A stretch of DNA of 64,000 bases, from contig NW_027361840.1 of NCBI RefSeq assembly GCF_039654945.1, positions 8,494,001 through 8,558,000 of the forward strand, given 5' to 3'. The DNA comes from Dendrobates tinctorius (lineage: Eukaryota). A program made the position numbers and the translations under genes. Under the pieces are notes generated by a model that did not search any database, was not told the DNA's origin, and saw nothing but the letters and a program-made list of their open reading frames with translations. Below, piece by piece: positions 4,010 to 49,450 of this stretch. Each line of letters begins with the position of its first letter. Position 1 is the stretch's first letter.

Positions 4010-4911
4010 TGTCACTTTGTCACTAGAGGCACTTTGTCACTAGCGTCACTTTGTCACTAGTATCTTTGTCACTAGCGTCATTTCGTCACTAGCCAAACTT
4101 TGTCACTAGCGTCACTGTCACTAGCGCCACTTTGTCACTAGTATCTTTGTAACTAGTGTCACTTTGTCACTAGCGTCACTGTCACTAGCGCCACTTTGTC
4201 ACTAGTATCTTTGTAACTAGTGTCACTTTGTCACTAGCGTCACTTTGTCACTAGCATCTTTGTGACTAGCGTCACTTTGTCACTAGCCTCACTTTGTCAC
4301 TAGCCTCACTTTGTCACTAGCATCTTTGTGACTAGCGTCATTTTGTCACTAGCCTCACTTTGTCACTAGCCTCACTTTGTCACTAGCATCTTTGTGACTA
4401 GCGTCACTTTGTCACTAGCCTCACTTTGTCACTAGCGTCACTGTCACTAGCGCCACTTTGTCACTAGTATCTTTGTGACTAGCGTCACTTTGTCACTAGC
4501 CTCACTTTGTCACTAGCGTCACTGTCACTAGCGCCACTTTGTCACTAGTATCTTTGTGACTAGCGTCACTTTGTCACTAGCCTCACTTTGTCACTAGCGT
4601 CACTGTCACTAGCGCCACTTTGTCACTAGTATCTTTGTGACTAGCGTCACTTTGTCACTAGCCTCACTTTGTCACTAGCGTCACTGTCACTAGCGCCACT
4701 TTGTCACTAGTATCTTTGTGACTAGCTTCACTTTGTCACTAGCGTCACTTTGTCACTAGTGCCACTTTGTCACTAGCGTCATTTCGTCACTAGCACCACT
4801 TTGTCACTAGCGTCACTGTCACTAGCGCCACTTTGTCACTAGTATCTTTGTGACTAGCCTCACTTTGTCACTATTGTCTTTGTCACTAGCGTCACTTTGT
4901 CTCTAGCGTCA
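4010..4911. repeat. Tandem minisatellite, 15-17-bp units with higher-order repetition
   Basis: Repeated GTCACTTTGTCACTAGC and variants such as TATCTTTGTGACTAGC. Confidence 0.95.
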
Positions 4912-5387: not shown

Positions 5388-6863
5388 TGCACCGTGCGAC
5401 TTGACAGACACACCGTGCGACATGACGGACACACCGTGCGACATGACAGATACACCGTGCGACATGACGGATACACCCTGCGACATGACGGATACGCCCT
5501 GCGACATGACGGATACGCCCTGCGACATGACGGATACACCCTGCGACATGACGGACACACCCTGCGACATGACGGACACACCCTGCGACATGACGGACAC
5601 ACCCTGCGACATGACGGATACACCCTGCGACATGACGGACACACCCTGCGACATGACGGACACACCCTGCGACATGACGGACACACCCTGCGACATGATG
5701 GACACACCCTGCGGCATGACGGATACACCCTGCGACATGACGGACACACCCTGCGACATGACGGATACACCCTGCGACATGACGGACACACCCTGCGACA
5801 TGACGGACACACCCTGCGGCATGACGGATACACCCTGCGACATGACGGACACACCCTGCGACATGACGGATACACCCTGCGACATGACGGATACACCCTG
5901 CGACATGACGGATACACCCTGCGACATGACGGATACACCCTGCGACATGACGGATACACCCTGCGACATGACGGACACACCCTGCGACATGACGGACACA
6001 CCCTGCGACATGACGGATACACCCTGCGACATGACGGATACACCCTGCGACATGACGGATACACCCTGCGACATGACGGACACACCCTGCGACATGACGG
6101 ACACACCCTGCGACATGACGGATACACCCTGCGACATGACGGATACACCCTGCGACATGACGGATACACCCTGCGACATGACGGATACACCCTGCGACAT
6201 GACGGATACACCCTGCGACATGACGGACACACCCTGCGACATGACGGACACACCCTGCGACATGACGGACACACCCTGCGACATGACGGATACACCCTGC
6301 GACATGACGGATACACCCTGCGACATGACGGATACACCCTGCGACATGACGGACACACCCTGCGACATGACGGACACACCCTGCGACATGACGGATACAC
6401 CCTGCGACATGACGGATACACCCTGCGACATGACGGCTACACCCTGCGACATGACGGATACACCCTGCGACATGACGGATACACCCTGCGACATGACGGA
6501 CACACCCTGCGACATGACGGACACACCCTGCGACATGACGGATACACCCTGCGACATGACGGATACACCCTGCGACATGACGGACACACCCTGCGACATG
6601 ACGGACACACCCTGCGACATGACGGATACACCCTGCGACATGACGGATACACCCTGCGACATGACGGATACACCCTGCGACATGACGGATACACCCTGCG
6701 ACATGACGGACACACCCTGCGACATGACGGACACACCCTGCGACATGACGGATACACCCTGCGACATGACGGATACACCCTGCGACATGACGGATACACC
6801 CTGCGACATGACGGATACACCCTGCGACATGACGGATACACCCTGCGACATGACGGATACACC
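5388..6863. repeat. Highly homogeneous 21-bp minisatellite, about 70 copies
   Basis: Unit GACATGACGGAYACACCCTGC; source of the RHDGYTL and CDMTDTP ORFs. Confidence 0.97.
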
Positions 6864-7407: not shown

Positions 7408-8362
7408 GAATTGTGATTGCAGCTCTGGATGTGACCGCATTATAAAATGTTATTGAAGAGCAGAATTGTGAATGCAGCTCTGGATGTGACCACGGTATAA
7501 ATTGATACCGAAGAGCAGAATTGTGAATGCAGCTCTGGATTTGACCGCAGTACAAATTGTTATTGAAGAGCAGAATTGTGAATGCAGCTCTGGATGTGAC
7601 CGCAGTATAAATTGTTATTGAAGAGCAGAATTGTGAATGCAGCTCTGGATGTGACCACAGTATAAATTGTTATTGAAGAGCAGAATTGTGAATGCAGCTC
7701 TGGATGTGACCGCAGTATAAATTGTTATTGAAGAGCAGAATTTTGAATGCAGCTCTGGATGTGACCACAGTATAAATTGTTATTGAAGAGCAGAATTGTG
7801 AATGCAGCTCTGGATATGACCGCAGTATAAATTGTTATTGAAGAGCAGAATTGTGAATGCAGCTCTGGATGTGACCGCAGTATAAATTGTTATTGAGCAG
7901 AATTGTGAATGCAGCTCTGGATGTGACCACAGTATAAATTGATATTGAAGAGCAGAATTGTGAATGCAGCTCTGGATGTGACCGCAGTATAAATTGATAT
8001 TGAAGAGCAGAATTGTGAATGCAGCTCTGGATTTGACCGCAGTACAAATTGTTATTGAAGAGCAGAATTGTGAATGCAGCTCTGGATGTGACCGCAGTAT
8101 AAATTGTTATTGAAGAGCAGAATTGTGAATGCAGCTCTGGATGTGACCACAGTATAAATTGATATTGAAGAGCAGAATTGTGAATGCAGCTCTGGATGTG
8201 ACCGCAGTATAAATTGATATTGAAGAGCAGAATTGTGAATGCAGCTCTGGATGTGACCGCAGTATAAATTGTTTTTGAAGAGCAGAATTGTGAATGCTGC
8301 TCTGGATGTGACCACAGTAGAAATTGATATTGAAGAGCAGAATTGTGAATGCAGCTCTGGAT
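7408..8362. repeat. 55-bp tandem repeat, about 17 copies
   Basis: Unit GAAGAGCAGAATTGTGAATGCAGCTCTGGATGTGACCGCAGTATAAATTGTTATT. Confidence 0.95.
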
Positions 8363-10016: not shown

Positions 10017-11625
10017 AATCAAATATATAGTATTATGTAGAAAGCAAAAGAAAAACAAACATCAGCTCAGCAGGTAGGTAAATATCTGAAATTATGGCGC
10101 GGCGCACAGCAACCTCAGTCTCTGATCAAGACTAAGAGAGTCATCTGGAAACGCGTAGACCCGGCGTCTCATCTTTTGTATGTATTTTTAATCTCCCCTT
10201 TGGATTTCTACATCCTATAATTAATGGGATTCTTTCATTTACTTATTTTTGTGGTTGCCGGCATTATTTCTCCTTTTTCATGATACATAGTATTATACAA
10301 GGACACCATGGGAGAAGAGTTTGGCAGCCATAGGGGCAATATATGGCCATCAGTCTGCACAGAGCTTGTATGCCGACCACAGGTAACTCGGATCAAAAAG
10401 GGATAAAGACCATAGGATCCACTAGAATCTGGTAAATAATATACATCTAATAATTACACATTGTATCATCGCACATAAAATTTGTATTATGGCAACTGTA
10501 AATCCTAATTATATTGGCGCTGTAATAAATCCCAAGGTGATGAGTGACCAATAAAAGCCTGGAAACGTAATCACAGTCGCGTGATTGTACGAGGCGCGGA
10601 TCGCCTGCATTGTCCAAATGTTCAGTGATTTCTGGGTCTGATCCACAATCTGGACCATAAAAGCAGTGGAAATGATGCACATTTTACATATATGGTGTTT
10701 TGTCACTTTATTTCTTGTTAGGTTGTGCGCACCCTGTCTAGTGATGGATCGCCCATTCGTGGCGAGAGATGAGAGGTGTCCGGACCCGACCATTCTCCGT
10801 GAGTCGGATACATTGTAGCAGAGGGATGGTCTCTTGTGTTTAGGACTCTGGCATTGACTACGTAGGATAACTAGTTAAAAAGTCCTTGGAGATGGTGAAG
10901 AATTGAAATATCAGCACTGTCTCATCATTAGTGTAACTCAGACCAGTCTGTCTGGAAAATGCACCAGTGTCTCATAAAGGGTCATCTCGGCAGAGATCCG
11001 CTGTTTAGTGTAAGTTATGCCAGTTTTTGCCAGAAATGTCACAATTTTGGTATCATTTTTGGTGCCCGGTGCCACATTTTAGCAGCACCACTTTCCCACC
11101 AAGTAGCGTCTTTTTAGTTGGACAATGCACAGTGTCTGGTAATGAGCAGAAAATGTCTAAAACACATAATAAATATGCTGCCCCAGTATTGTGGCACCGT
11201 AACTGGATCAATATGGTGATTGAAGGGGCTGATTATTCATTCCAGAGCCCCATAATAAAAACAATGGATGCTCATCTCCTGCAGCGGCATCTCTACAGCA
11301 ATGTTGGCGCCGCTGTTCCAGGTTGATGACATATTGTATCACTTGACTGCTGCAGCCGATCAGTGGCCATTGATTAGCTGCAGCGGTCTTGTAGCACACC
11401 AGGAACAGCAGCACCAACATTGCTGGGCACAGGCACTGCTCATTACTGGAGGTGAGCAGCCTTTCTTTTTATCCTCTATTGGGCATTATATTGATTAGGT
11501 AGTGGTTTTTTTTTTATCAGTGCACAACCCCTTTAAGTTTTATTTACAGCCCCAATTCCAAGAAAGTTGGACGCTGTGTAAAATGTAAAGAGAACAAGAA
11601 ATCAACGATCTGGAAAGCTCATCAT

Positions 11626-14600
11626 TGTCACGTCGCCGTCAGACTCGGGGCCTGCTGTTCAGGCCTCGGCTACCAGGAGGCGCCGGACTGACATGTCATC
11701 ATCGAATTCAGGGCCTGCTGTTCCGCCCTCAGCCACTAGGAGGCGCCGTGGCTCGCGCCCGAGTAATGGCGGCAACAGTGAAAGGGCTTCTGCACAGGCG
11801 TCTAGTGGACACAGACTCCGCTCCTCTGTCAGTCATGAAGGGGTTGGTGCATCGTCATCAGGTCTGGTCCTGGGGGCGGTCCTGATGACATCATCAGCCC
11901 GGGAGCCTGTGAGGGATGACCTGATCCCTCAAATACCTTTGGACTGGGCTTGCAAGCCGCCGGATATATTCTTGGTTCCCCTGCGTGTTACTGTGTGAAT
12001 TGCTGTTTGACTGACTCTGACTTTTGCCTGGATTCTGACTCTGCTTCTGCCTAACGATTCTGTACCTCTGCGACTCTCCTGGTTTATGACTCTGACTTCG
12101 GCCTGGATTCTGACTCTGCTTCTGCCTAACGATTCTGTACCTCCGCGACTCTCCTGGTTTATGACTCTGGCTTCTGCCTGGAAACTGACTCTGCTACTGT
12201 CTACTGTTTTTGTACCGTTGCTGCCTGACTGGTTTAGTCTCGGATATCATTGCCTCTGTGTCCTGTGTTGGAACACCTTTCTGGCGACCGTCCTGCTCTG
12301 GTCATTGCTCCTATTCAGACAGCGCCTCCTGGGCTCTGCTATAAATCCAGATCCCTGTATAGGGGTAAAGGGTATCAGTGTTTCTCGGGGTGTTGTCTGG
12401 CTGCAGTCCAGACCGCAGGCAGACGTCACATTATATCCGGCCACAAAAAAATAAAACTGCTCTTGTGTCTATACTTAACACATATAAAAGCAGTTTTCCT
12501 CACCTTTTTTTTTTCTTCCTCCTGACTGAGCTGATTCTTGGCCCAAACACCTGTTACACTGCACAGCCTGGAAGGTCACTCTCAGGCTCAAGCATGCTGC
12601 AGCCTGGAAGCTTCAAAGAAAATGCTGGCTGTTGGAAATCCACATTCCTGGATCATCGCCCCCTGGACAGCGCTGGGGGGTCAGGTATTGCCCGCAAAAG
12701 CGGCCAAACTGTTGTTACCAGTTTCCCTTTCTTTTGCTAAGAAACGTCTGTGTGTGAAGGCTTATGTGGATTGTGGTGCTGCCGGCAACCTTATGGATTT
12801 TTTATTTGCTAAGAGTCTGGGTGTACCTCTGCTAAGGCTTAAAGCGCCTATTCAGACTATTACAATTAATGGTACATCTATAGACCAGGGAGGCGTGGAA
12901 TTCATTACTGACGACATTTCTATGTCAGTGGGGACATTACATAACGAACAAATGTCATTTTTTGTTATACACAATTTATCAGATCCAGTTGTGTTAGGCA
13001 TGCCATGGTTGCACCAGCATAATCCAGTTATTGACTGGCGCATAGGTGACGTTGTGCGCTGGAGTCCACGGTGTCAGAATCACTGTATGTCACTGTCAGT
13101 GAACCAAGTTAAAATTAAAAACCCCTCCATTCCATATGCATTCGGAGATTATGAAGATGTCTTCTCCATAGTGGAGTCTGAGAAACTACCTCCTCATAGA
13201 GAGTACGACTGTCCTATAGACTTGGTCCCTGGTGCCCGTCTCCCTAAGGGGAGAATATTCAACCTCTCGGGTCCGGAGCGTGTAGCCATGAATGACTACA
13301 TAGCAGACAGCCTACGAAAAGGCTTCATTAGACCCTCCACCTCACCTGTAGGAGCTGGGTTTTTCTTTGTAGAAAAAAAAGATGGTGGACTCAGACCATG
13401 CATCGATTATCGTGAGCTGAACGCAATTACTGTAAAAAATCAGTACTCGCTCCCACTCATTCCTGATCTGTTTAATCAGCTACTGGGAGCCCGCTGGTTT
13501 ACTAAACTTGACCTCCGGGGGGCATATAACCTGGTCCGCATAAGAAGCGGTGACGAATGGAAAACGGCCTTTAATACACCCCTTGGCCATTTTGAGTACC
13601 TTGTAATGCCGTTCGGACTCAGTAACGCTCCTGCCGTATTTCAACACTTTGTCAATGACATTTTCAGGGACATTTGTGGGGTGTATGTCGTCGTGTATCT
13701 GGATGACATTTTGATTTATTCGGCTGACCCTGTGATACATGCTCAACACGTCCGTTCGGTATTGCAGAGACTGCGAAAAAACTCTTTGTTTGCGAAATTA
13801 GAAAAATGTGTTTTTTTTGCTGAAGAGGTACAGTTCTTAGGATACATGGTCTCAGGCAAGGGGTTTCGCATGGACCCTGCCAAGATTCAACCCATTAAGG
13901 ATTGGGTGCAACCCAAATCGCTGAAAGCGCTGCAGCGGTTTTTGGGATTTGCGAATTATTACCGCAAGTTTATCAGGGGTTTCTCTGAGATTGCCAAGCC
14001 ACTCACGGACCTTACCCGAAAAGGGGCAGACGTGACTAATTGGAATCCTGAGGCAACCCGAGCTTTTTCTACACTAAAGGAGTGCTTCGTGGCCAACCCG
14101 GTGTTGATTCAACCAAACTTGGACCACCCCTTTATTGTTGAAGTAGATGCCTCCGAAGTCGGAGTGGGAGCAGTGCTCTCGCAAGGCACTGCATCCCTCA
14201 CTCAGCTTCGCCCATGTGCGTTTTTCTCCCGCAAATTCTCTGCCACGGAGAGAAACTATGACGTCGGTAATCGGGAATTACTGGCGATCAAATGGGCCTT
14301 CGAGGAATGGCGCCACTTCCTCGAAGGTGCCAAACACAAGGTCACTGTTATTACAGACCACAAAAACCTAACCTACCTAGAGTCAGCTAAAAGACTAAAT
14401 CCCAGGCAGGCTAGGTGGGCCTTGTTTTTCTCCAGGTTTGATTTTATAATCACCTTCCGCCCCGGGACTAAAAATGTGAGGGCAGATGCCCTCTCTCGCA
14501 GTTTCTGCCCCACACAGACCGAGGACTGTGAACCAGTCCCAATATTGGCTAATGGAATCGTCGTGTCGGCAGTGTCTTTGGACCTTCTGGAGGAGATCCG

Positions 14601-16760
14601 TAGGTCTTCAGAGCAAGTTCCTGACACTACGCCCCCCAAAAAATTGTTCGTTCCGGCTAACCTTCGTCTGCAGGTTCTAAAAGAATCGCACGACTCTGTC
14701 CTAGCAGGCCATCCGGGTCTCAATAATACCACCAGGTTGGTAACTAGGAACTTTTGGTGGCCGACGGTGGTCAAGGACTGTAAGGACTATGTTTCAGCGT
14801 GTGAAGTCTGTGCCCGCGTCAAGTCCCTCCATAGTCGCCCTGCCGGCTGGCTTCAGTCCTTGCCCAACCCTGAGAGTCCATGGACCCACATCTCCATGGA
14901 TTTCATTACAGACCTGCCGCCATCCGATGGGAAAACTTGTATCTGGGTGGTGGTAGACAAGTTCAGCAAGCAGGGCCATTTTATTCCCCTGTCTGGGTTG
15001 CCTAACTCTGAGACTTTAAGTAAGTTGTTTATCCTGCACATTGTACGTCTGCACGGCGTTCCGGCAAATATTGTGTCCGACAGGGGTACCCAGTTTGTCT
15101 CGAAGTTCTGGAGGGCATTCTGTAGACGCATTGGTGTGGAGTTGTCCTTCTCTTCGGCATACCATCCCGAAACTAATGGTCAAACTGAGCGTACTAACCA
15201 AGCTCTGGAACAATACCTCCGCTGTTATGTGTCAGGACATCAGACCGATTGGGTGGAACATCTGCCATTGGCTGAGTTCGCCCTCAATAATCGATATCAA
15301 GACTCCATTAAAACTACCCCTTTCTTTTGTAACCTTGGACTACATCCACGCTTTGGGTCGTTTTCGGCCAGGATGTCGGAGCTCCCTGGGGTTGAGCAAA
15401 ATATACATCGGCTAAAAACGATTTGGTCTGAGGTTAATTCAAATTTGAAAGGGGCTCAGGTTAGACAGGCTTCAGCTGCAAATAGACGACGATCTAAGGG
15501 GCCGCACCTGGGAGTTGGCGACAAGGTTTGGCTCTCTACAAAAAATATCAAGCTTAAGGTACCGTCCGCCAAACTAGGTCCCAGGTTCATCGGCCCATAC
15601 GAAATTATCGAGGTGGTTAACCCAGTAGCCTTCTGCTTAAAACTTCCACAGTCATTCAAATTGCCTAACGTTTTCCACAGGTCTCTCCTCAAACCTTATC
15701 GTTCTCCCATTCACCCTGTTCAGTCCCCTCCTCCTCCTGTTTCGGTCGGGGGAGCTCTGGAGTATGAAGTCCAGGGTATCCTTGACTCCCGCCTTGTGAG
15801 GGGCTCAGTACAGTATCTGGTACACTGGAAGGGCTACGGCCCAGAAGAAAGGTCCTGGGTTCCTGCGGGGAACGTCCATGCCAAGGCATTAATTAGGAGA
15901 TTTCATCTTCTTCACCCTGACAAACCGGGTTTTGAGGGTCCGGAGGCCCCTCCTGGAGAGGGGGGTACTGTCACGTCGCCGTCAGACTCGGGGCCTGCTG
16001 TTCCGCCCTCAGCCACTAGGAGGCAACGGACTGTCACGCCACCCTCGGGCTCAGGGCCTGCTGTTCAGGCCTCGGCTACCAGGAGGCGCCGGACTGACAT
16101 GTCATCGTCGAATTCAGGGCCTGCTGTTCCGCCTTCAGCCACTAGGAGGCGCCGTGGCTCGCGCCCGAGTAATGGCGGCAACAGTGAAAGGGCTTCTGCG
16201 CAGGCGTCTAGTGGACACAGACTCCGCTCCTCTGTCAGTCATGAAGGGGTTGGTGCATCGTCATCAGGTCTGGTCCTGGGGGCGGTCCTGATTACATCAT
16301 CAGCCCGGGAGCCTGTGAGGGATGATCTGATCCCTCAAATACCTTTGGACTGGGCTTGCAAGCCGCCGGATATATTCTTGGTTCCCCTGCGTGTTACTGT
16401 GTGAATTGCTGTTGACTGACTCTGACTTTTGCCTGGATTCTGACTCTGCTTCTGCCTAACGATTCTGTACCTCTGCGACTCTCCTGGTTTATGACTCTGG
16501 CTTCTGCCTGGAAACTGACTCTGCTACTGTCTACTGTTTTTGTACCGTTGCTGCCTGACTGGTTTAGTCTCGGATATCATTGCCTCTGTGTCCTGTATTG
16601 GAACACCTTTCTGGCGACCGTCCTGCTCTGGTCATTGCTCCTATTCAGACAGCGCCTCCTGGGCTCTGCTATAAATCCAGATCCCTGTATAGGGGTAAAG
16701 GGTATCAGTGTTTCTCGGGGTGCTGTCTGGCTGCAGTCCAGACCGCAGGCAGACGTCACA
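11626..16760 (+). mobile_element. Gypsy (Tf1/sushi-type chromovirus) LTR retrotransposon, two LTRs, gag missing
   Basis: LTRs at 11626-12430 and 15969-16760 (TG..CA). Perfect 5-bp TSD ATCAT at 11621-25 and 16761-65. PPT GGAGAGGGGGG precedes the 3' LTR. Confidence 0.97.
12622..16404 (+). CDS. pol: Gypsy Pol polyprotein PR-RT-RNaseH-IN-chromodomain, uninterrupted, reading into the 3' LTR
   Basis: Motifs: VDCGAAGN (protease), YLDD (RT), VDAS..GAVL and TDHKNL (RNase H), HHCC plus D,D,E and GPY (integrase), YEVQGILDSR..YLVHWKGYGPEERSW (chromodomain). First in-frame ATG is at 12622. Confidence 0.93.
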   Translation: MLAVGNPHSWIIAPWTALGGQVLPAKAAKLLLPVSLSFAKKRLCVKAYVDCGAAGNLMDFLFAKSLGVPLLRLKAPIQTITINGTSIDQGGVEFITDDISMSVGTLHNEQMSFFVIHNLSDPVVLGMPWLHQHNPVIDWRIGDVVRWSPRCQNHCMSLSVNQVKIKNPSIPYAFGDYEDVFSIVESEKLPPHREYDCPIDLVPGARLPKGRIFNLSGPERVAMNDYIADSLRKGFIRPSTSPVGAGFFFVEKKDGGLRPCIDYRELNAITVKNQYSLPLIPDLFNQLLGARWFTKLDLRGAYNLVRIRSGDEWKTAFNTPLGHFEYLVMPFGLSNAPAVFQHFVNDIFRDICGVYVVVYLDDILIYSADPVIHAQHVRSVLQRLRKNSLFAKLEKCVFFAEEVQFLGYMVSGKGFRMDPAKIQPIKDWVQPKSLKALQRFLGFANYYRKFIRGFSEIAKPLTDLTRKGADVTNWNPEATRAFSTLKECFVANPVLIQPNLDHPFIVEVDASEVGVGAVLSQGTASLTQLRPCAFFSRKFSATERNYDVGNRELLAIKWAFEEWRHFLEGAKHKVTVITDHKNLTYLESAKRLNPRQARWALFFSRFDFIITFRPGTKNVRADALSRSFCPTQTEDCEPVPILANGIVVSAVSLDLLEEIRRSSEQVPDTTPPKKLFVPANLRLQVLKESHDSVLAGHPGLNNTTRLVTRNFWWPTVVKDCKDYVSACEVCARVKSLHSRPAGWLQSLPNPESPWTHISMDFITDLPPSDGKTCIWVVVDKFSKQGHFIPLSGLPNSETLSKLFILHIVRLHGVPANIVSDRGTQFVSKFWRAFCRRIGVELSFSSAYHPETNGQTERTNQALEQYLRCYVSGHQTDWVEHLPLAEFALNNRYQDSIKTTPFFCNLGLHPRFGSFSARMSELPGVEQNIHRLKTIWSEVNSNLKGAQVRQASAANRRRSKGPHLGVGDKVWLSTKNIKLKVPSAKLGPRFIGPYEIIEVVNPVAFCLKLPQSFKLPNVFHRSLLKPYRSPIHPVQSPPPPVSVGGALEYEVQGILDSRLVRGSVQYLVHWKGYGPEERSWVPAGNVHAKALIRRFHLLHPDKPGFEGPEAPPGEGGTVTSPSDSGPAVPPSATRRQRTVTPPSGSGPAVQASATRRRRTDMSSSNSGPAVPPSATRRRRGSRPSNGGNSERASAQASSGHRLRSSVSHEGVGASSSGLVLGAVLITSSAREPVRDDLIPQIPLDWACKPPDIFLVPLRVTV

Positions 16761-18735
16761 ATCATATTTTATCACACAGAACAGATCAGATGTTGTGCGT
16801 TGGACATTTTTGCTTTTTGGCGCTGACATGTCTCATGGCCCAGGTACAATGGTGGACACCATCTGGGTAGAACTGTTCTGAGATTTGTCACTGCAAACAA
16901 TTTCTAAATTAGGTTATTTTTTTCAAATGAAATGTAAAAATGTTCAACTTCTGATCTCTTCTATTATTATTATTATTTATTTATATAGCACCATTGATTC
17001 CATGGTGCTGTACATGAGAATGGGTTTCATACAAATATTTGTATTCTATGCTCTTTATGATAACATACGGCAATCAGAGATTTCAAGATCATTGCTTTCT
17101 GGTTTTCTTTACATTTTATAGCTGCACAACTTTTTTGGAATTATGTTGCACATTAAAATGGAAAACTTATTTATCATCCGAAATGAAAGGAATGAATAGA
17201 ACATTTATCATCAATTTTCTATACTTTTCAATTTTGATTTCATCACTCCACAAAGAACTCAGTTCATGTTGTATTGGGTCTCTAATAAAGATGTTTAAAT
17301 ACAGTATATATTAACATGATACAACAAATCAATGAAAACCCTCCGAAAGAAAAAGGCATCAATGTAACATTAAATTCATGATGTCACAAGAATGATTACT
17401 TATTTCCAAGAAAAATCACAAGGTAATGTGCGTTCAATGGGTCATATTATGCGCCCATGGCGGTGCCCTGAATTTTTACATTGAGGATCAAATTAATGCT
17501 GACTAGACTGTAATTCTCCTAAGAAACATTGGTACGTCTTTCTATAAAGAGTGGCAAATTATGGTTGAAAACCAGAAGAAAACATCTAATATTAACAAAT
17601 GAAATAGCTATGTGATGTAATAGAAGTATAATCAGTATAAAGCCATCATGTGGAAAAGCAGAGTGGTTATGCCAGATAGGAGTTGAGATTTACCTTTCCA
17701 TAAACTAAAAATCGCTGAATAGAATCTTGGACAAAACAAGAACTTTGTGGATTTTTTAAGGAGAAAATGTGATCCCAAAATGTAATATAAAATACTGATA
17801 GTGATGCAGATGCTTCTGCTAATTTGCTGCCTCCATGGTTTGTTGCTCTCATTGTTCCATGTAACATCTAGAAACTTGGTGGCATCTGTGTTTGTGCATG
17901 AGGAGCTGCCACCCTGATGCACTCATATCCACCATCCCTGATACTGTGCTATCAGTCATGAGCAATTTATGTCCTCATTCCTCACATTGTCAGAGTCACT
18001 TCTGTCATTTCCGCCCCACGTTGTTTGCTCAGTGTCTGGGTGTGATGCTCTGGCCTCACCTGTTGTTTTTCAGCTCGGTAATCCGTCTCTCATGATGCGT
18101 CTCAGATCCCTCGTCTTTCCTTGTGCAAGGAACAAAACATGGGAGCTTCTCCTCCTGGCTTCAGACATAGTGACGGCGAGCCCAAAGAGACTGAATGGCT
18201 TCAGAGTGCCCAGACAGCCTTGTAATTAAGATGACGGCAGAAGTTATATTACAGGTGTATTAAAGGCTTGGCGAGGACAATACAGGGCATAAAACATACA
18301 AATCCCATACAAATCACAAGGCCAACCACCTATGGGTTGGGACACGGTGGGAGAAGCAGCCAAGTCTGGGAGAGCAAATCTACCCTCTACAGACCGTCGA
18401 GTTCCCAAGAAGTCAGGATTGACCCTTGGAGACCTAAGACTTCTAGCACAATGCTCTGTGAGCGAAACATCCCCAACTATAGACTGAAACATTGTAACAA
18501 ACGAGCAGATGATGTGTGCAGACCTCAGAGCACTTCATGGACTGGATACATTGTATCTAGGAGATTCTGCTGCAGCTTCTGAATAGAGGCATATTGATCA
18601 TTTACTAACAGCAAGCAGAGATACTGAAAATGTGAAGGAATTAAAACAGAAAGAAGATTTGCAAAGACTTTGTGTTTGTGCGAGCACATCATTTTGCCTT
18701 AAATTTTGAAACTGATTCTTTACAAAAGCCTGTCT

Positions 18736-20428
18736 CATAGAATCCTAGAATGGTAGAGCTGGAAGGGACCTCCTGGGCCATCTGGTCCAACCCCCTGCTC
18801 AAAGCAGGATTTGCTAAATCATCCCAGTCAGATGTCTGTCCAGCCTCTGTTTGAACACTTCTATTGAAGGAGAACTCACCACCTCTCGTGGCAGCCTGTT
18901 CCACTCATTGATCACTCTGTCAAATAGATTTTTCTAATATCTAATCTGTGTCTCCTCCCATTCAGTTTCATCCCATTGCTTCTAGTCTTTCCTTGTGCAA
19001 ATGAGAATAAAAATGATCCTTCTACAATGTGACAGCCCTTGAGATATTTGTAGACAGCTATTAAGTCTCCTCTCAGTCTTCTCTTCTGCAAGCTAAACAT
19101 TCCCAAATTCTGCAACCTTTCCTCATAAGACAGGGTTTGCAGACCTGTCACCATTCTGGTCGCTCTTTTCTGAACTTGCTCCAGTTTGTTGATGTCTTTT
19201 TTAAAATGTGGCGCCCAGAACTGGACACAATATTCCAGATGAGGTCTCACCAAAGAGGAGTAGAGGGAAATAATGACTTCACGTGATCTAGACTGTATGC
19301 TTCTGTTAATACATCCTAGAATTGCATTTGCCTTTTTTGCTGCTGCATCACACTGTTGACTCATATTCAGTCTGTGATCTATTACTATACCCAAGTCTTT
19401 TTCATATGTGCTGTTGCTTAGCCCTATTCCTCCCATTCTATATATGCCTTTTTCATTTTTATTGCCCAGATGTAGTACTTTGCATTTTTCCCTGTTAAAA
19501 ACCATTCTGTTAGTTGCTGCCCACTGCTCCAGTTTATTTATATCTTTTTGAATCCTCTCTCTCTCTTCTCTAGTATTAGCTATCCCTCCTAACTTTGTGT
19601 CATCAGCAAATTTAATCAGTTTACCCTCAATTCCTTCATCTAAATCGTTGATAAAGATGTTGAACAATACAGGGCCCAGGACAGAGCCCTGTGGTACAAC
19701 ACTTGAGACATTCTTCCAACTGGATGTGCAGCCATTTACGACCACTCTTTGGGTCCGATCACTAAGCCAGTTATGAATCCACCTAACAGTTGCCTTGTCC
19801 ATTCTATACTTAGCCATTTTTTCAATAAGGATTGTGTGAGATACTTTGTCAAATGCTTTGCTGAAGTCAAGATATACTATATCTACAGCATTTCCTTGAT
19901 CCACCCAATCAGTGATTCCGTAATAGAAGGAAATTAAGTTAGTCTGACATGACTTATTAGTTACAAACCCATGCTGACTCTGTTTAATCACTTCATTCTT
20001 ATCCAGGTATTGACATACATGTTGTTTAATAATTTGTTCAAAGATCCTTCCTGGTATAGAAGTCAGACTCACCAGCCTATAGTTGCCTGGGTCCACCTTC
20101 TTCCCCTTTTTGAAGATAGGAAGAACATTTGCTCTTCTCCAGTCTTCTGGGACTTCTCCTGTTCTCCAAGAATTTTCAAAGATTATGGAGAGGGGTTCAA
20201 AAATGTCTTCTGCTATCTCCTTCAGTACTCTGGGGAGTAATTCATCTGGACCTGGAGACTTGAATTCATTTAGGTTAGCTAAGTGTTTCCTCACCATCTT
20301 TCTGTTTATAGATATCCTGGATTCTTCTATTCCCTTAATAGGATAGTGAGGATCAGTTGATGTTACATTTTGTTTCTGAGAGAAAACAGATGCAAAATAG
20401 GAATTTAAAAGTTCGGCCTTCTCAACAT
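18736..20428 (-). mobile_element. CR1 LINE, 5'-truncated ORF2 RT portion
   Basis: Motifs KSPGPD, GNYRLVSLTS, YLDFSKAFDKV, PQGSVLGP, FADD, VRPHLEYCVQFW. The 3' end has the CR1-type ATTCTAGG/ATTCTATG tail. Candidate TSD CCTGTCT at 18729-35 and 20429-35. Frameshift near 18910. Confidence 0.95.
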
Positions 20429-21212
20429 CCTGTCTTACCATTAATTCTGCCCTAAAAGTCCGCGTTTGTGAAAGGTCTCGTGCATGTTCTCCATTAGTGC
20501 AGCCATATTCCCTCCTTTGAAAACGGTGTCGGAGCGCACATCTCTGCCTTCCTCTGTTGCGGTACAGATTAGACTTTTTTTTCGTTTGCACATTTTAAAA
20601 AGCCCAATTCCATGTGTCTGTCTGTATCTATGCAGCAGACGAGCTTCTTCATCACCCCAGGATTACAGCGATGTCTATGGCACAAAGGGTGAAACAGATG
20701 ATTAGCTGGCAAAGCGTAAAGAGCAGCAAAACATTAATGAATGTGGGAGAAAGTTTATTAGAAAGGTGCAGCAGAGCTTCCATCTGATGGCTGCGGCCTG
20801 TGCAGACTAATATCCATGCTAATTAGGGGTAATGCTCGGAGGAGCTCGGCTCCCCCAGACACGTGTAGTCAGAAAGCTCCGTGGGTTTGGAGCATCGTGT
20901 CCTCAGTAATTACACAAACAGTGAGAAGGGTGGAGAGGAGCTGACATCAGCATCCCACAAAATGCCCCGAACCTGCGAGAACACACGACGCTTCATTAGA
21001 AGAAACCATTAGTATAATAATAATATCTGGAGCAGAGGGTGGAGGCGTCTCCTCCACTGCCCGGGGCTCCCCAACACCTGCTCCAAACACAACACCGCCA
21101 TCATCACTGTCTGCTGCTATTAGGTGCAATTATAGGGATTCATTACCTCTATGATACAAGATAAAGATGTATTCTGTGACATGGGAGAGAAAGGAAGGAA
21201 GGAGAAAAGAGA

Positions 21213-27091: not shown

Positions 27092-27871
27092 CACGGCTCA
27101 GCAGACAGTATCACACAGGAGAGGATTAGATACACAGCTCAGCAGACAGTACCACACAGGATAGGATTAGATACACGGCAAAGCAGTCAGTATCACACAG
27201 GAGAGGATTAGATACACGGCTCAGCAGACAATATCACACAGGATAGGATTAGATACACGGCAAAGCAGTCAGTATCACACAGGTTAGGATTAGATACACG
27301 TCTCAGCAGACTATCACACAGGATAGGATTAGATACACGGCTCAGCAGTCAGTATCACACAGGATAGGATTGGATACAATGCTCAGCAGACTGTATCACA
27401 CAGGATAGGATTAGACACATGGCTCAGCAGTCAGTATCACACAGGATAGGATTAGATATACGGCTCAGCAGACTGTATCACATAGGAGAGGATTAGATTC
27501 ACGGCTCTGCAGTCAGTATCACACAGGATAGGATTAGATACACGGCTCAGCAGACAGTATCACACAGGAGAGGATTAGATACACGGCTCAGCAGTCAGTA
27601 TCACACAGGAGAGGATTAGATACACGGCTCAGCAGACAGTATCACACAGGAGAGGATTAGATACACAGCTCAGCAGACAGTATCACACAGGAGAGGATTA
27701 GATACACGGCTCAGCAGTCAGTATCACACAGGAGAGGATTAGATACACGGCTCAGCAGTCAGTATCACACAGGAGAGGATTAGATACACGGCTCAGCAGT
27801 CAGTATCACACAGGAGAGGATTAGATACACAGCTCAGCAGTCAGTATCACACAGGATAGGATTAGATACAG
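27092..27871. repeat. 41-bp tandem repeat, about 19 copies
   Basis: Unit GGCTCAGCAGTCAGTATCACACAGGAGAGGATTAGATACAC; decayed copies also lie at about 22412-22512. Confidence 0.95.
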
Positions 27872-30550: not shown

Positions 30551-33500
30551 TGTCAGGAGCCCCGCACTGCACTTGCTTACTGAGCCAGTGCGGGTGTCCT
30601 GAGTACAAAAACAGTGCTCAAAGATACCTGTGGAGCAGGGCAGCAGCGGTGACGATGTGTGCTTCAGACTATCAGGACCTGAAGCATGTGACTGCTGGGG
30701 GCGGGCGTGACCTAAGCTCCACAGAGCTGGAAGCTGCAGGGAAACTCCTAGAAAGGTAACTACAGGACAATGTTACCAAGGGGCATAGACAGAGACAGAA
30801 ACCAGATGAAGCCAGGGTCAAAGAACAAGATAGCAATACAATACGAAAGGGTTAGACAGAGTGGATAGTCAGGACGTAGCAATAGATCAGAAAACCAGAA
30901 CGGGCAATAGATGGTACAATAGAGACAAACTGTAATGGAGTAACGATAGCCAAGCAAGGAGGTCAGAACCGAAGACAAAAGTACCAAAGCGAGAGACTGA
31001 GTACAGAGTGAGGGAACAGGCCGGGTCATACATGGGAAGCAAACAAGCAACGCAGAATACACGCACACCAGGGGTCAGACACACCAGAACAACAGTATAG
31101 CTGACAGAAAACCCTGGTAAAGAGTGAGTATAAATACCCCTCCCAGATCCAGAAAGAGGCCACGAACACTTAACCCTGTGAGTGCAGGGCAAGAACCCTG
31201 TTCAAACCATGACAATACCCCCCTCTTAACAGGGGGCCACTGGACCCCCCAGGCTTATCTGGGTATCTGGCGTGGAAAGCCCGCACCAGACGATCTGCAT
31301 GCACCGAACTGGCTGGAACCCATGACCGATCCTCCAGAGAGTACCCCTTCTAGTGTATCAGATACTGGAGTCTCCGGCGCACCCACTCGGAGTCAACAAT
31401 GCACCCTACTTCATACTCCAGCTGCCCCTCTACCAGCACTGGCGGAGCATTTGATGAGGATCCTCTCTCACCGTCCCCACAGGCTTTAACAGGGACCTGT
31501 GGAAGACATCAGAAATTTTAAAGGAGGTGGGCAGCTGCAGTCGGTAGGCTACTGGGCTAACAACCTCCACAACTTTGTATGGGCCAATAAACTTGGGGCC
31601 CAGCTTTATAGAAGGTATCTTAAGCTTGATATTGCGGGTGGATAGCCACACCTTCTCCCCTACTGCAAATGCTGGACCTGGCCCCCTCCTCCTGTCAGCA
31701 AACCGCTTATAGTTTTGCTGGGCCTTGGAAATATTCCTCTGAACCTCCCTCCAAAGAATTCTAAGACGTTGTGTCGCACCCTCAGCACCAGGACAACCTG
31801 AATCCATACGGGAAAACTCTCCAAAATGTGGGTTAAACCCATAGTTGACCTGAAAAGGAGACTTCCCAGTAGATTGCATTCAACGGTCGTGTGAGTCAAA
31901 CTCTGCCATGGGCAATACCTCACACCAGTCCTCCTGCCTGGAAGAGGCCAAGCATCTCAGAATCTGCTCCAATGATTGGTTCGTGCGCTCCGTCTGTCCA
32001 TTAGACTCTGGGTGGTAGGCAGAGGAGAAGGACAATGAAATCCCCAACTTTTTGCAAAAAGCCCTCCAGAACCTGGCTACAAACTGTACCCCTCTGTCTG
32101 ACACCACATTCATAGGCACTCCATGCAACCGAATTATATGCTGCATAAATAAGCGGGCCAGGGTTTCAGCAGATGGTAACGCGGGGAGAGGTACAAAGTG
32201 AGCTTGTTTTGAAAACCTATCCACCACCACCCATATCACTGAGTTGCCCCTGTAAGGAGGAAGATTTGTGATAAAATCCATGGACAAATGTGTCCATGGT
32301 CTATCCGGAATTGGCAAAGGCACCAATTCCCCGGCCGGCCGGACCTGAGAACTTTTAGAACGAGCGCACACCCCACATGCAGTCACAAACTTTTTAATAT
32401 CTGTTACCATAGAGGGTCACCAGAAACCCCTCGCAATTGCCCCCTGGGTAGCTGCAATCCCAGGATGAGCACTCAACACAGAATCGTGAAATTCCTGCAT
32501 AAGTCCGAGACGGAAACGTTCCGGAACAAACAATTTACCCGGGGGTTTACCACCAGGAGCCCGAGCCTGGGCCTCCAAAATCCCTCTCTGTAACTCAGGT
32601 GAGTTTTCGGCCACCACTACTCCTGGCTGAAGAATGGAGTAGGGAGGTTCTGGAGGGGACACTGAATCAAAGCTTCGGGATAAGGCATCAGCCTTGATGT
32701 TTTTAGATCCCGGGCGGAATGTGATGGTAAACTGAAATCGAGAAAAAAAAAGCGCCCACCGAGCCTGTCTGGGGGTCAATCTCTTGGCAGACTCGATATA
32801 GGCTAAATTTTTGTGATCAGTGATGACTGTAATGGGATGAACATCCCCCTCCAGGAAATGCCTCCATTCTTCAAAAGCCAACTTTACCGCCAACAACTCT
32901 CTATTGCCGACATCGTAATTTCTCTCGGCAGAGGAAAATTTTTTAGAGAAGGCGCAAGGCCTCAGATTAGTAAAGGTAGGAGGGCCCTGAGACAATACTG
33001 CCCCACCCGTACTTCTGAGGCATCAACCTTCACAACAAAAGGTCTTAACTGGTCGGGTTGTACCAATACAGGGGCTGAAGAAAAGCACTTTTTTAATGTC
33101 ATGAAAGAATTTTTTGCAGCTCAGACCAATTTTTTACATCAGCTCCATTGAGAGTGAGGTCCGTTAGAGGCTTTACCACCTGTGAGAAGCCCTTAATAAA
33201 TTTCCTATAGAAGTTGGCAAAGCCCAAAAATCGCTGCAACCCTTTCAAGTCATGAGGCTGCACCCAATCCGTAACAGCCTGGACCTTCTTAGGATCCATG
33301 CGGAACCCCTCCCCTGACACAATCAACCCCAGAAAGGATACTTCTTGCATGAAAAATGAGCATTTTTCCAACTTGGCATACAAATGATTCTCCCTCAGTC
33401 TCATGAGAACCATCCGCAAATGGTGCAAGTGAGATTGACTGTCCACCGAGTACACCAGAATGTCATCCAAATAGATGACCACAAAACGGCCAATTAAATC

Positions 33501-36150
33501 AGAGAAAATTGCATTAATAAAATTCTGAAAAACAGCAGGAGCGTTGGTGAGACCAAAGGGCATAACCAAGTTTTCGAACAGCCCTTCAGTCGTCAGGAAT
33601 GCTGTTTTCCATTCGTCCCCTTCCCGGACTCTTATAAGGTTATACGCCCCACGTAAATCCAGTTTAGAGAACCACTTGGCCCCGGTGAGTTGGTTACATA
33701 GATCAGGAATTAGGGGGAGAGGGTATGTATTTTTCACAGTAATTTTGATTAATTCCCGAAAGTCGAGGCACGGCCGCAAACCACCATCTTTTTTCTTAAC
33801 AAAAAAGAAGCCACAGGTGAAAGAGAAGGCCTAATATGCCCTTTGCGGAGACTCTCGGTAATGTACTCCTTCATGGCTAGACATTCGGGCCCGGACAAAT
33901 TGAACAGGCGAGCCTTGGGTAACTTGGCTCCAGGGACTAGATTAATGGCACAATCAAAGGGTCTATGTGGTGGTAGCGCCTCAGCCTCACTTTCAGAAAA
34001 TACATCTTCAAAATCTTTCAGGTACTCCGGAATACCTTCCAGACCGACAGACGACACTGACACAGATTTTACTGGGGTGACAAGAGTTGTCAAATTACAA
34101 CATAGACCATTAGCCATACAACCCCAGTGAATGATCTCCCCCGTGACCCAGTCAATAGTAGGATTGTGACGTTGAAGCCAAGGCATACCCAGTACCAGTC
34201 CAGCCGGCAGATTATTTATAACAAAACACCTTAATTTTTCCACGTGAGTGGAACCCACTTTGAGAGAAAAGGTATCAGTCATGAAACAAATTCCCGCCTA
34301 GGTGATAGGAGAAGAATCAATTGTCACGATTTTAACAGGATCTTTTAACCTGACTGTCCCTATCTTATGAAAAGTCACAACTTTGGCATCGATCAGATTA
34401 ATAGAAGAACCACAGTCAACAAAGGCGGTAGTCACAACCGGACCGCCTGTAAGTTCCAGTTCCACCGGAAGCAGAATTTTAGTAAGCGAGTAAAAGGGTA
34501 CCTGGGAGTCTGGGCAACCTCCTCGATTGCTACCCAGACTCAGTCGTTTTCCTGACGGCTTCACTGAAGAAGGGCAAGAAGGACAGTTCCTTCTCCAATG
34601 TCCAGCGGATCCACAGTAAAAGCACAATTGGTTGTTTCTTCGGTGTCTCCTCTCTTTTTCCTCCAATGACGTGGCACCAACCTCCATAGCTCAGGATTAG
34701 ATGCAGAGTCTCTCAGATTGGAGAATAAAGGGGTCTCCTGCAGCATGACCCCTCTTGCCCGCAGCCTACGGTCCATGCGGACAGCCTGGATCATAGCGTC
34801 CTCCAAAGAATCCGTTGGAGGATGAAGGGCTAGGGCATCTTTCAAACGTTTGGACAGGCCTCTACAGAACAAACCCCGGAGGGCAGCGTCATCCCAGGAG
34901 ACCTCCGCTGCCCAGGGTCTGAACGCAGAGCAGAACCATTCAGCAGAGTGCCTCCCCTGTGTCGCACTCATCACCATGTCCTCTGCCAGACACACTCTAT
35001 GAGGCTCATCATAAATGTGCCCCAGAGCCTCAAAGAACAAATTCACAGACATACGTTCAGGAGCAGAGGAAGAGAGAGAGAAAGCCCACGCCTGTGGAGC
35101 CCCCCGAAGTAGGGAAATGATGACCCCCACCCTCTGGAACTCATCCCCAGAGGAGCCGGGCCTCAGAGAAAAAAAAAGCTTGCATCCTTCACTGAACTCC
35201 TTTTTATCCCCTGAGAAAGGGTCGGGCAATTTGACAGGAGATTTGGGGGATGCCAATGACACATCTCTACCCCCAGAACTAGAAGCCCCTGCAGCGACAG
35301 CCCCCTGCACAGTAACCACCAACTGTTGCTGGGTCTGGGCCATCGTGCGCTGTTCCACATTAAGTCTGTGGAACATTTGGATCAGGTGCTTGACCTGATC
35401 AGCCAAAGCTTGTATGGGATCCATGAGGATAACACTTTTTTTTTTTCTCCTCAGAGGAAAAAAAAAAACTGAAATGGTCAGCTATAATGTCAGCAGCCCC
35501 GCACTGCACTTGCTCACTGAGCCAGTGCGGGTGTCCTGAGTACAAAAACAGTGCTCAAAGATACCTGTGGAGCAGGGCAGCAGCGGTGACGATGTGTGCT
35601 TCAGACTATCAGGACCTGAAGCACGTGACTGCTGGGGGCGTGGCCTAAGCTCCACAGAGCTGGAAGCTGCAGGGAAACGCCTAGAAAGGTAACTACGGGA
35701 CAATGTTACCAAGGGGCATAGACAGAGACAGAAACCAGATGAAGGCTGGGGCAAAGCACAAGATAGCAATACAGTACCAAAGGGTTAGACAGAATGAATA
35801 GTCAGGACGTAGCAATAGATCAGAAAACCAGAAGGGGCAATAGACGGTACAATAGGGACAAACTGTAACGGAGTAACGATAGCCAAGCCAGGAGGTCAGA
35901 ACCGGAGAAGACAATAATACCAAAACGAGAGATGGAGTACAGAGTGAGGGAAAAAGCCAGCTCATACACGGGAAGCAAACAAGCAACGCAGCATACACGC
36001 ACACCAGGGGTCAGACACATCAGAACAACAGTATAGCTGACAGAGAACCCTGGTAAAGAGTGAGTATAAGTACCCCTCCCAGATCCAGAAAGAGGCCACG
36101 AACACTTAACCCTGTGAGTGTAGGACAAGAACCCTGTTCAAACCATGACA
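30551..36150 (-). mobile_element. Full-length but frameshifted Gypsy (Tf1/sushi-type) LTR retrotransposon
   Basis: LTRs at 35488-36150 and 30551-31214, visibly diverged. PPT at about 31217-31227. TSD is degenerate (GTGAC/GTACC). Confidence 0.95.
31230..35424 (-). pseudogene. gag-pol: Gypsy gag-pol, fragmented
   Basis: Gag MDPIQALADQV.. (35424), zinc knuckle CFYCGSAGHWRRNC, protease FVDCGS, RT YLDD, RNase H TDHKNL, integrase DRGVQF..ERTNQ and GPY, split over about 7 ORFs. Confidence 0.92.
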
Positions 36151-40650: not shown

Positions 40651-41130
40651 GGCCGGAGTCACACTGGCGAGGAATACGGGAGAGTGAGAGGCGCAAAAAG
40701 CACGCATTAGACACGGACAAATGATTCTCTATGGGGTCCCTCGCACCAGGTGTATATTTCTCCTCAGTATCCTACGCTCCGTGCCACTCGCAGCATGCTG
40801 GGACTGTCAGCGTACTACGCCCGTAATACGTCAATGTAAGTCTATGGGTGCGCAAAAAATACGGATTACACACGGATCACACATGTGACTTGCGAGAAAT
40901 ACGCACCCGGTGTCTTTGGAAACCCTGTCATAGGGCTCCATTATATGTCCATTTTGCAAGCCTGCGAGAAAATCTCACCATACGGATTACATACGGATGC
41001 TGACATGCGCAAAATACACGACCACACCTTGATTACGGATGACATACGGAGCACTGTTTAGGGGCCATTCATCCGTATTACGCATGTAAAATACTGACCG
41101 TAATTTGCGCAGGTTAGTGTGACTCCAGCC
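40651..41130. mobile_element. Harbinger-type MITE, internally deleted copy
   Basis: TIR GGCCGGAGTCACACT / AGTGTGACTCCAGCC; TAT duplication. Confidence 0.88.
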
Positions 41131-41707
41131 TATCAGTGTGCTCTGCAGTACTGAGGGCTTGTTACAATGTGTCAGTGTGCTCTGCAGTGCTGAGGGCTTG
41201 TTGCAATGTATCAGTGTGCTCTGCAGTGCGGAGGCCTTGTTACAGTGTGTCAGTGTGCTCTGCAGTGCTGAGGACTTGTTACAGTGTATCAGTGTGATCT
41301 GCAGTGCTGAGGACTTATTACAATGTATCAGTGTGCTCTGCAGTGCTGAGGACTTGTTACAGTGTATCAGTGTGATCTGCAGTGCTGACAGTTTGTTACA
41401 ATGTATCAGTGTGCTCTGCAGTGCTGAGTGCTTGTTACAATGTATCAGTGTGCTCTGCAGTGCTGAGGGCTTGTTGCAATGTGTCAGTGTGCTCTGCAGT
41501 GCTGAGGGCTTGTTGCAATGTATCAGTGAGCTCTGCAGTGCTGAAGGCTTGTTACAATGTATCAGTGTGCTCGGCAGTGCTGAAGGCTTGTTACAATGTA
41601 TCAGTGTGCTCTGCAGTGCTGAAGGCTTGTTACAATGTATCAGTGTGCTCGGCAGTGCTGAAGGCTTGTTACAATGTATCAGTGTGCTCTGCAGTGCTGA
41701 GGACTTA

Positions 41708-49300: not shown

Positions 49301-49450
49301 AAGGTGAGATGCTCTGCCGGAAGGTGAGATGCTCTGCAGGCTCTGCGGGAAGGTGTGATGCTCTGCGGGAAGGTGCGATGCTCTGCGGGAAGGTGCGATG
49401 CTCTGCGGGAAGGTGCGATGCTCTGCGGGAAGGTACGATGCTCTGCGGGC
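46325..49450. repeat. Composite minisatellite of interspersed 20-bp and 29-bp units
   Basis: GGGAAGGTGYGATGCTCTGC with or without an added AGGCTTTGT. Confidence 0.96.

What the first reader, a model, noticed from the sequence alone, without database searches (positions are those of the whole stretch)
11626..16760. Young Gag-less Gypsy element with a fully intact, ATG-initiated Pol
Seen: only about 190 bp separate the 5' LTR end (12430) from an in-frame ATG (12622) that opens 1260 codons of PR-RT-RH-IN-chromodomain. No capsid or intact zinc knuckle occurs in any frame. The TSD is perfect, and the LTRs differ by only about 7 substitutions apart from repeat-unit indels. Known: LTR retrotransposons need Gag, and common non-autonomous derivatives lose pol and keep gag or nothing. 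Inference: the leader is not a clean cut of a fresh gag (at most a decayed CYTAQPG knuckle-like trace near 12550). This may therefore be a Pol-only lineage that borrows Gag in trans, possibly one half of a bipartite Gag-only/Pol-only pair sharing LTRs.
Basis: partly seen in the sequence, partly recalled or inferred. Interest (0 to 1): 0.75.

Follow-up and report, generated by a model that had tools for sequence, protein, structure and literature searches.

The report
Gag-deleted copy of a sushi-like Gypsy
This is a real, young LTR retrotransposon copy that has lost its capsid (gag) gene but keeps an intact enzyme (pol) gene. It is most likely an ordinary deletion derivative of gag-bearing relatives, and whether it founded a Pol-only lineage could not be tested with the data reachable here.

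Summary
The LTRs are 11626-12430 and 15969-16760, with a perfect 5-bp target duplication (ATCAT). The LTRs differ by 7 substitutions in 729 aligned bases, one 1-nt indel and two repeat-unit indels. One ORF (ATG 12622, stop 16404) encodes PR-RT-RNaseH-IN-chromodomain and keeps 225 of 229 near-invariant residues.

No gag is present. A profile of 35 relatives' gag finds the neighbouring element B at E=1e-66 and nothing in any of the six frames of this element.

New here: the element is a self-priming (Tf1/sushi-type) chromovirus. Ten bases in the LTR (11959-11968) are the exact complement of the primer-binding site (12432-12441), and relatives show compensating changes. The pol ORF also runs 435 nt into the 3' LTR.

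Every relative whose 5' part could be read carries gag: element B, three frog loci and three Logan contigs. Gag loss is therefore derived.

No second copy of this family exists in the window or in any searchable collection. "One-off deletion" and "propagating Pol-only lineage" cannot be separated. Gag-less, Pol-keeping LTR elements are already known in plants (BARE-2; Cinful/Zeon). Verdict: real, mostly ordinary, low-to-moderate interest.

The parts
11621..11625 (+). 5' target-site duplication ATCAT
   Evidence: Read directly; identical to 16761-16765.
11626..12430 (+). 5' LTR (805 bp, TG...CA). It holds two 63-bp units at its start and about 2.6 copies of a 75-bp unit at 12012-12203.
11959..11968 (+). 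Predicted start of R and self-primer (GCCGGATATA), the exact reverse complement of the PBS. The same 10-mer sits in the 3' LTR at 16365-16374.
   Evidence: The 10-mer occurs 3 times in the window against 0.07 expected. MFE and centroid folds pair it with the PBS. The TSS itself is inferred.
12340..12345 (+). TATAAA, a candidate polyadenylation signal near the end of R (inferred only)
   Evidence: Read directly. Its position 85 nt before the LTR end fits a poly(A) signal if R starts at 11959. Not tested.
12432..12441 (+). Primer-binding site (TATATCCGGC), one base after the LTR. It has no TGG, so it is not a tRNA 3'-end site.
   Evidence: Element B, L083, L016 and L006 have the same layout with compensating base changes.
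12442..12621 (+). Leader where gag should be: 180 nt with no detectable similarity to gag, NC or any relative's leader. It holds an out-of-frame ATG at 12594.
12622..16404 (+). Pol ORF of 1260 codons (frame open from 12535). Domains: PR 12754-13014, RT 13369-13848, RNase H 14041-14439, IN zinc domain 14650-14826, IN core 14875-15168, SH3 15517-15702, chromodomain 15763-15906. Homology to relatives starts at about 12703.
   Evidence: Keeps 225 of 229 columns that are at least 95% conserved in 103 relatives. DCGA, YLDD and an HHCC-type zinc-motif match are present.
15955..15965 (+). Polypurine tract GGAGAGGGGGG, three bases before the 3' LTR
   Evidence: Read directly. Element B has the same motif before its 3' LTR.
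15969..16760 (+). 3' LTR (792 bp). Its first 436 nt (15969-16404) encode the Ser/Pro/Arg-rich C-terminal tail of Pol, including three 63-bp (21-aa) units.
16761..16765 (+). 3' target-site duplication ATCAT
30551..36150 (-). Element B, the comparator. It is an older, decayed, gag-bearing relative on the other strand (LTRs 93.6% identical; gag 35424-34561; pol broken by frameshifts) and has the same self-priming layout.

Best explanation
This is a non-autonomous, gag-deleted copy of a self-priming, sushi-like (Tf1/sushi-type) Ty3/Gypsy chromovirus.

Shown:
- It descends from gag-bearing ancestors. About 0.75 kb is missing relative to element B (internal region 3.54 kb against 4.27 kb in B), and that stretch would have held the capsid and nucleocapsid parts of gag.
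- PR-RT-RNaseH-IN-chromodomain is left as a single open frame.
- Every cis signal is left in place: LTR ends, self-primer and PBS, and the polypurine tract.
- It integrated by integrase (5-bp duplication).

Inferred:
- It integrated roughly 1-5 million years ago for assumed rates of 1-5e-9 per site per year.
- The copy is a sporadic or low-copy deletion derivative. It was either born deleted in the replication cycle that produced it, then packaged and probably also reverse-transcribed by the Gag and Gag-Pol of a full-length relative, or it lost gag by a genomic deletion after insertion.
- Its Pol is intact simply because the copy is young.
- Alone it cannot form particles.
For: - Structure and age.
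- No gag by Pfam, tblastn, profile search with a positive control, and shuffle-controlled alignment.
- Every relative with a readable 5' part has gag directly upstream of PR. These are element B, L081-L083 and the frog loci L084, L085 (3 copies) and L086 (2 copies).
- In the RT tree the element sits with B and P0012 (95/78) inside a 100/96 clade of gag-bearing elements, so the loss is derived.
- Self-priming layout with compensating changes in five elements.
- Pol integrity. The four deviations at near-invariant sites compare with about 2 expected from neutral drift since insertion.
- An intact ORF has probability about 0.5 under neutrality at this age, so no selection on a Pol-only state needs to be invoked.
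- No second copy and no Gag-only partner in 64 kb.
Against: - A single copy cannot show that it is sporadic. The family is absent from all searchable collections.
- The 180-nt leader holds no recognisable remnant of either end of gag. A very recent simple deletion might have left one, although relatives are too distant (45-60% aa) for short or variable remnants to be seen.
- The in-frame ATG 34 codons before the Pfam protease match (27 codons before homology to relatives starts) is what a selected Pol-only form would have. It would also arise by chance or be gag's own start codon.
Confidence: 0.6

Rival explanations
1. It is an established Pol-only sublineage. The gag-less form has transposed repeatedly using Gag supplied in trans (BARE-2-like), possibly paired with same-LTR Gag-only elements (Cinful/Zeon-like).
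For: - All cis signals and Pol are intact.
- There is an in-frame ATG just upstream of PR.
- No gag remnant is left.
- The insertion is young with a perfect TSD.
- Such systems exist in plants (PMC4350172; PMC8547701).
Against: - No other copy, solo LTR or Gag-only partner is in the window.
- None is in any collection.
- All ten or so relatives examined keep gag.
- From general knowledge: in Ty3/Gypsy elements Pol normally enters particles as a Gag-Pol fusion, so a free Pol may not be packaged and would not be kept by selection.
- Intactness is explained by youth.
Confidence: 0.3
2. It is an assembly artefact. Gag is present at the locus but was collapsed or skipped by the assembler.
For: The window is extremely repeat-rich, and such regions are prone to misassembly.
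Against: - The window has no N.
- The junction region is unique sequence with a continuous reading frame into PR.
- Nothing at 12442-12700 looks like a join of repeats.
- The assembler kept both LTRs with their private differences.
Confidence: 0.04
3. The element is autonomous, with an unrecognisable capsid protein encoded elsewhere. Candidates are the 122-aa ORF in R-U5 (12086-12454), the Pol N-terminal extension, or the LTR-encoded C-terminal tail.
For: ORFs exist at those places. The C-terminal tail is Arg-rich, as nucleic-acid-binding tails are.
Against: - No family match for any of them.
- The 122-aa ORF is a translation of CT-rich 75-bp repeats.
- Only 34 residues precede PR.
- The tail is low-complexity Ser/Pro/Arg sequence.
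- All relatives use a PEG10/RTL-type capsid of about 290 aa in the canonical place.
Confidence: 0.03

Closest known systems
Tf1/sushi group of Ty3/Gypsy chromoviruses (sushi-ichi of pufferfish; related elements of fish and frogs)
   Same: - Same PR-RT-RNaseH-IN-chromodomain order and a Tf2-type SH3 in IN.
- A PBS complementary to the first bases of R instead of to a tRNA. Self-priming is described for this group (PMC6317226).
- Relatives' gag is of the PEG10/RTL type.
- 5-bp TSD and TG...CA LTR ends.
   Different: - No gag at all.
- Pol frame extended 435 nt into the 3' LTR.
- The predicted self-primer is 10 nt. From memory, Tf1 uses 11.
BARE-2 of barley (Tanskanen et al. 2007, 'Life without GAG', as cited in PMC4350172)
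   Same: An LTR retrotransposon that cannot make Gag but keeps pol and its cis signals. It can move only with the Gag of an autonomous relative.
   Different: - BARE-2 is a Copia element of plants and a proven high-copy lineage with a known partner (BARE-1).
- Here there is one copy, no known partner, and the whole gag region is gone rather than only its expression.
Cinful (pol) / Zeon (gag) of maize, and 25 further split families (PMC8547701)
   Same: Pol-encoding copies without gag exist as a stable state in a Gypsy family.
   Different: That system is defined by Gag-only and Pol-only copies sharing LTRs, with fewer than 1% of copies holding both. No Gag-only partner or second copy could be looked for here beyond 64 kb.

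Membership tests
Ty3/Gypsy chromovirus | Domain order PR-RT-RNaseH-IN with a C-terminal chromodomain | tested here: met
   Pfam. Catalytic motifs and 225 of 229 near-invariant columns are kept.
Ty3/Gypsy chromovirus | LTRs with TG...CA ends, a short TSD, and a PPT before the 3' LTR | tested here: met
Ty3/Gypsy chromovirus | A gag (capsid/nucleocapsid) gene upstream of PR | tested here: not met
   Hence a defective member, not an autonomous one.
Tf1/sushi group | Self-priming: the PBS is complementary to the 5' end of the element's own RNA, not to a tRNA | tested here: met
   In silico only. There is a 10-nt exact complement at the same offset in A and B with 3 compensating differences, and the same layout in L083, L016 and L006. 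Statistics are and the fold. The TSS was not measured.
Tf1/sushi group | Placement of RT/IN within the clade that holds Tf1 and sushi-ichi | not tested
   No reference sequences of Tf1 or sushi-ichi were available from the tools. The tree places it only among fish and frog relatives, whose gag is of the PEG10/RTL type.
Gag-less non-autonomous lineage (BARE-2-like) | Several copies with the same gag defect at different sites (different TSDs) | not testable with these tools
   The source genome is not searchable. There is no same-family sequence in any collection and none elsewhere in the window.
Gag-less non-autonomous lineage (BARE-2-like) | An autonomous partner with matching LTR and packaging signals that supplies Gag | tested here: not met
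   Tested within the window only. Element B has gag, but its LTRs are unrelated and it is decayed.
Bipartite Gag-only/Pol-only family (Cinful/Zeon-like) | Gag-only copies sharing the LTR of the Pol-only copies | not testable with these tools
   None in the window. The LTR-tail protein search was empty.

The most novel reading that the evidence does not exclude
The copy belongs to a propagating Pol-only sublineage of a vertebrate chromovirus. That sublineage would be mobilised by Gag in trans, perhaps as one half of a Gag-only/Pol-only pair. So far such systems are described only in plants.
Probability: 0.2. Interest if true: 0.55.

Novelty: new member of a known kind. Interest (0 to 1): 0.25.

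Why it matters
As it stands this is a well-preserved example of a common event, internal deletion in an LTR retrotransposon. It adds a clean in-silico case of Tf1/sushi-type self-priming, with compensating changes across vertebrate elements.

It would matter more if a genome-wide census showed many copies with the same junction. That would be a vertebrate counterpart of BARE-2 or Cinful/Zeon. It would also raise the question of how a Pol that is not fused to Gag gets into particles.

Tried and rejected
1. **Decayed zinc knuckle in the leader.** MAFFT placed ORF residues 19-35 under the relatives' CCHC knuckle. A profile of that region scores at chance, so this was rejected.
2. **Remnant of the gag N-terminus in the leader.** By eye there was an 'AD..KHL' resemblance to element B. 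It does not exceed shuffles at DNA or protein level.
3. **Homology of the leader to relatives' leaders.** Only a T-run matches.
4. **Pol proteins of about 1100 aa in the database as possible gag-less relatives.** Their contigs carry a separate gag ORF, so this was rejected.
5. **Frog gene models that start inside RT (P0025, P0016, P0087).** They are chimeric models over full elements with gag.
6. **Searches for same-family copies.** Whole Pol, N-terminal piece, LTR tail, metagenome and viral collections, and the exact LTR/PBS junction were all empty at family level.
7. **Literature search for 'gag-less'.** It returned mostly glycosaminoglycan papers.
8. **Source organism.** It was not identified. 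The nearest Pol relatives are anuran, but no host gene was found in the window.

Element B's broken genes were used only as separate unbroken pieces.

Full report
**What is there.**
- The 5' LTR is 11626-12430 and the 3' LTR is 15969-16760. Both start TG and end CA.
- The pentamer ATCAT flanks the element on both sides, at 11621-11625 and 16761-16765.
- A gap-aware alignment gives 7 mismatches in 729 aligned bases (6 transitions, 1 transversion; K2P 0.0097).
- There is also one 1-nt indel, one extra 63-bp unit at the start of the 3' LTR and one extra 75-bp unit in the 5' LTR.
- For assumed rates of 1-5e-9 per site per year, the age is about 1-5 million years.
- The polypurine tract GGAGAGGGGGG lies at 15955-15965, three bases before the 3' LTR.

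**The coding region.**
- One frame is open from 12535 to the stop at 16402-16404. Its first ATG is at 12622, giving 1260 codons.
- Pfam finds protease, reverse transcriptase, RNase H, the integrase zinc domain, the integrase core, the Tf2-type SH3 domain and a chromodomain. It finds no gag family.
- In an alignment with 103 relatives, the protein keeps 225 of the 229 columns that are at least 95% conserved. It has DCGA, YLDD and an HHCC-type zinc-motif match; the loose D..35E pattern gives several ambiguous matches.
The last 145 residues, a Ser/Pro/Arg-rich tail with three 21-residue repeats, are therefore LTR-encoded.

**Is gag really absent?** Yes, by every test available.
- Pfam finds nothing in any ORF of the LTR or leader, even at E up to 1.
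- tblastn with the gag parts of six relatives hits the window only at a second element, B, on the other strand.
- A profile built from 35 relatives' gag finds B at E=1e-66 and gives only negative scores in all six frames of this element.
- The stretch 12443-12693, in three frames, aligns to B's gag and nucleocapsid no better than shuffled versions do.
A profile of the knuckle-to-protease region of 51 relatives scores 1.0 bit on the leader, rank 6 of 503 among shuffles.
- Detectable homology to relatives begins at ORF residue 56, about nt 12703. In the frog relatives that point lies 17-26 residues after the end of the zinc knuckle.

**What kind of element it is.** The ten bases that begin one base after the 5' LTR (12432-12441, TATATCCGGC) are the exact reverse complement of ten bases inside the LTR (11959-11968; also 16365-16374 in the 3' LTR).
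- The 10-mer occurs three times in the window against 0.07 expected.
- Element B has the same layout at the same offset with a different 10-mer. The two differ at three positions, and each difference is compensated in the PBS.
- Three further relatives (L083, L016, L006) show the same arrangement. In L083, L006 and B an A/T-rich box lies about 30 nt upstream of the LTR site.
- Folding the RNA from 11959 to 12450 pairs its first ten bases with the PBS in both the minimum-energy and the centroid structure.
- There is no TGG at the PBS, so a tRNA 3' end is not the primer.
- This is the self-priming arrangement described for the Tf1/sushi group (PMC6317226).
- The relatives' gag is of the PEG10/RTL type, which fits the sushi group.
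- The prediction that R starts at 11959 follows from this and has not been measured. It implies a 663-nt 5' UTR with upstream ATGs at 12086, 12161 and 12594. Element B has four upstream ATGs before its gag, so this is normal for the group.

**Relatives.**
- Element B (minus strand, 30551-36150) has LTRs 93.6% identical, lies inside a 39-bp satellite and is 61-71% identical to this Pol in RT and IN. It carries a gag ORF, followed by a frame-shifted knuckle and a decayed pol.
- The best database proteins are 55-66% identical and come from frogs and fish.
- The Pol-only proteins of about 1000-1100 aa among them come from contigs with a separate gag ORF. The proteins of about 1430 aa have gag fused.
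- Three frog loci fetched around truncated gene models hold one, three and two full copies. Each has gag directly upstream of PR.
- In an RT tree the element groups with B and P0012 (95/78). That group sits inside a clade supported at 100/96, in which every member with a known 5' part has gag.
- Gag loss is therefore derived. It happened somewhere on this element's own long terminal branch (0.34 changes per site).
- In relatives the PBS is 0-52 nt from the gag ATG. Here it is 180 nt from the pol ATG, and those 180 nt match nothing.

- The window holds no second copy or solo LTR.
- Three protein word searches found nothing of this family. They used the whole Pol, the N-terminal 254 residues and the LTR-encoded tail.
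- The metagenome scan, the viral scan and an exact search for the LTR/PBS junction also found nothing.
- The internal evidence is neutral. An intact 3.8-kb ORF has a probability of about 0.5 of escaping new stop codons at this age.
- Four deviations at near-invariant residues are close to the roughly two expected from drift since insertion.
- The in-frame ATG could be selected, fortuitous, or gag's own start codon left by an in-frame deletion.
- From general knowledge, Pol of Ty3/Gypsy elements enters particles as part of a Gag-Pol fusion. A free Pol would probably not be packaged. A gag-less copy would then be carried wholly by a helper, and its Pol would not be maintained.
- That favours a recent deletion over an old Pol-only lineage, but the argument is an inference.
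- I put about 0.6 on a sporadic deletion derivative (born deleted, or deleted after insertion). I put 0.3 on a propagating gag-less sublineage, of which a true bipartite pair is a small part. The rest goes to an assembly artefact or a hidden capsid gene.

**Comparison with what is known.**
- Gag-less LTR elements that keep pol are documented. BARE-2 of barley uses the Gag of BARE-1 (PMC4350172).
- Maize Cinful (pol) and Zeon (gag), together with 25 further families, split the two functions between copies (PMC8547701).
- If a lineage were shown here it would be a vertebrate example of a known strategy. As a single copy it is a new member of a known kind.

**Limits.**
- The source organism was not identified. 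Its nearest Pol relatives are anuran, and no host gene was found in the window.
- No contig looked human.
- One bench step is referred.

Noticed in passing
window 30551-36150 (minus strand): Element B is a second, older sushi-like Gypsy element. It has gag (35424-34561), a frame-shifted CCHC knuckle, a decayed pol, LTRs 93.6% identical and an imperfect TSD (GGTAC/GTCAC). It is inserted in a 39-bp satellite. It has the same self-priming layout and PPT motif as the element under study.
   Followed up: yes
window 28315-30547 and 36155-44945: A large 39-bp satellite array totalling about 11 kb, split by element B. Strong GC skew and many spurious long ORFs come from it.
   Followed up: partly
window 11554-11620 and 17077-17142: Inverted repeats of about 70 bp (81% identical) flank the insertion site. 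The element therefore appears to sit inside a MITE-like unit of about 450 bp.
   Followed up: partly
window 15969-16404 (and 11626-11998 in the 5' LTR): The pol reading frame runs 435 nt into the LTR and ends about 40 nt after the predicted start of R. The LTR-encoded tail holds 21-residue Ser/Pro/Arg repeats whose number differs between the two LTRs.
   Followed up: partly
window 46352-49453: A G-rich 20/49-bp tandem array of about 3 kb gives a 948-aa ORF on the minus strand with only sub-threshold Pfam hits. It is not a gene.
   Followed up: partly
window 50149-51186 (minus strand): An intact 345-aa Tc1/mariner-type transposase ORF (HTH_Tnp_Tc3_2 and DDE_3).
   Followed up: no
window 57624-61752 (plus strand): A DIRS-like retroelement with three ORFs. 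The first has a LAP2alpha-type domain, the second has RT and weak RNase H, and the third (384 aa) has no family match.
   Followed up: no
window 18912-20588 (minus strand): A 558-aa ORF with a reverse transcriptase domain only, probably a LINE fragment.
   Followed up: no
L085 (Pristimantis) and L086 (Lithobates): Related gag-pol elements stand as head-to-tail tandem copies (periods of about 4946 and 5122 bp) sharing LTRs. The annotated 'genes' there are chimeric models across copies.
   Followed up: partly
window 4011-4911, 5390-6863, 7408-8362, 27092-27870, 51421-52412: Further tandem arrays with periods of 17, 21, 55, 41 and 43 bp. The whole window looks heterochromatic.
   Followed up: no
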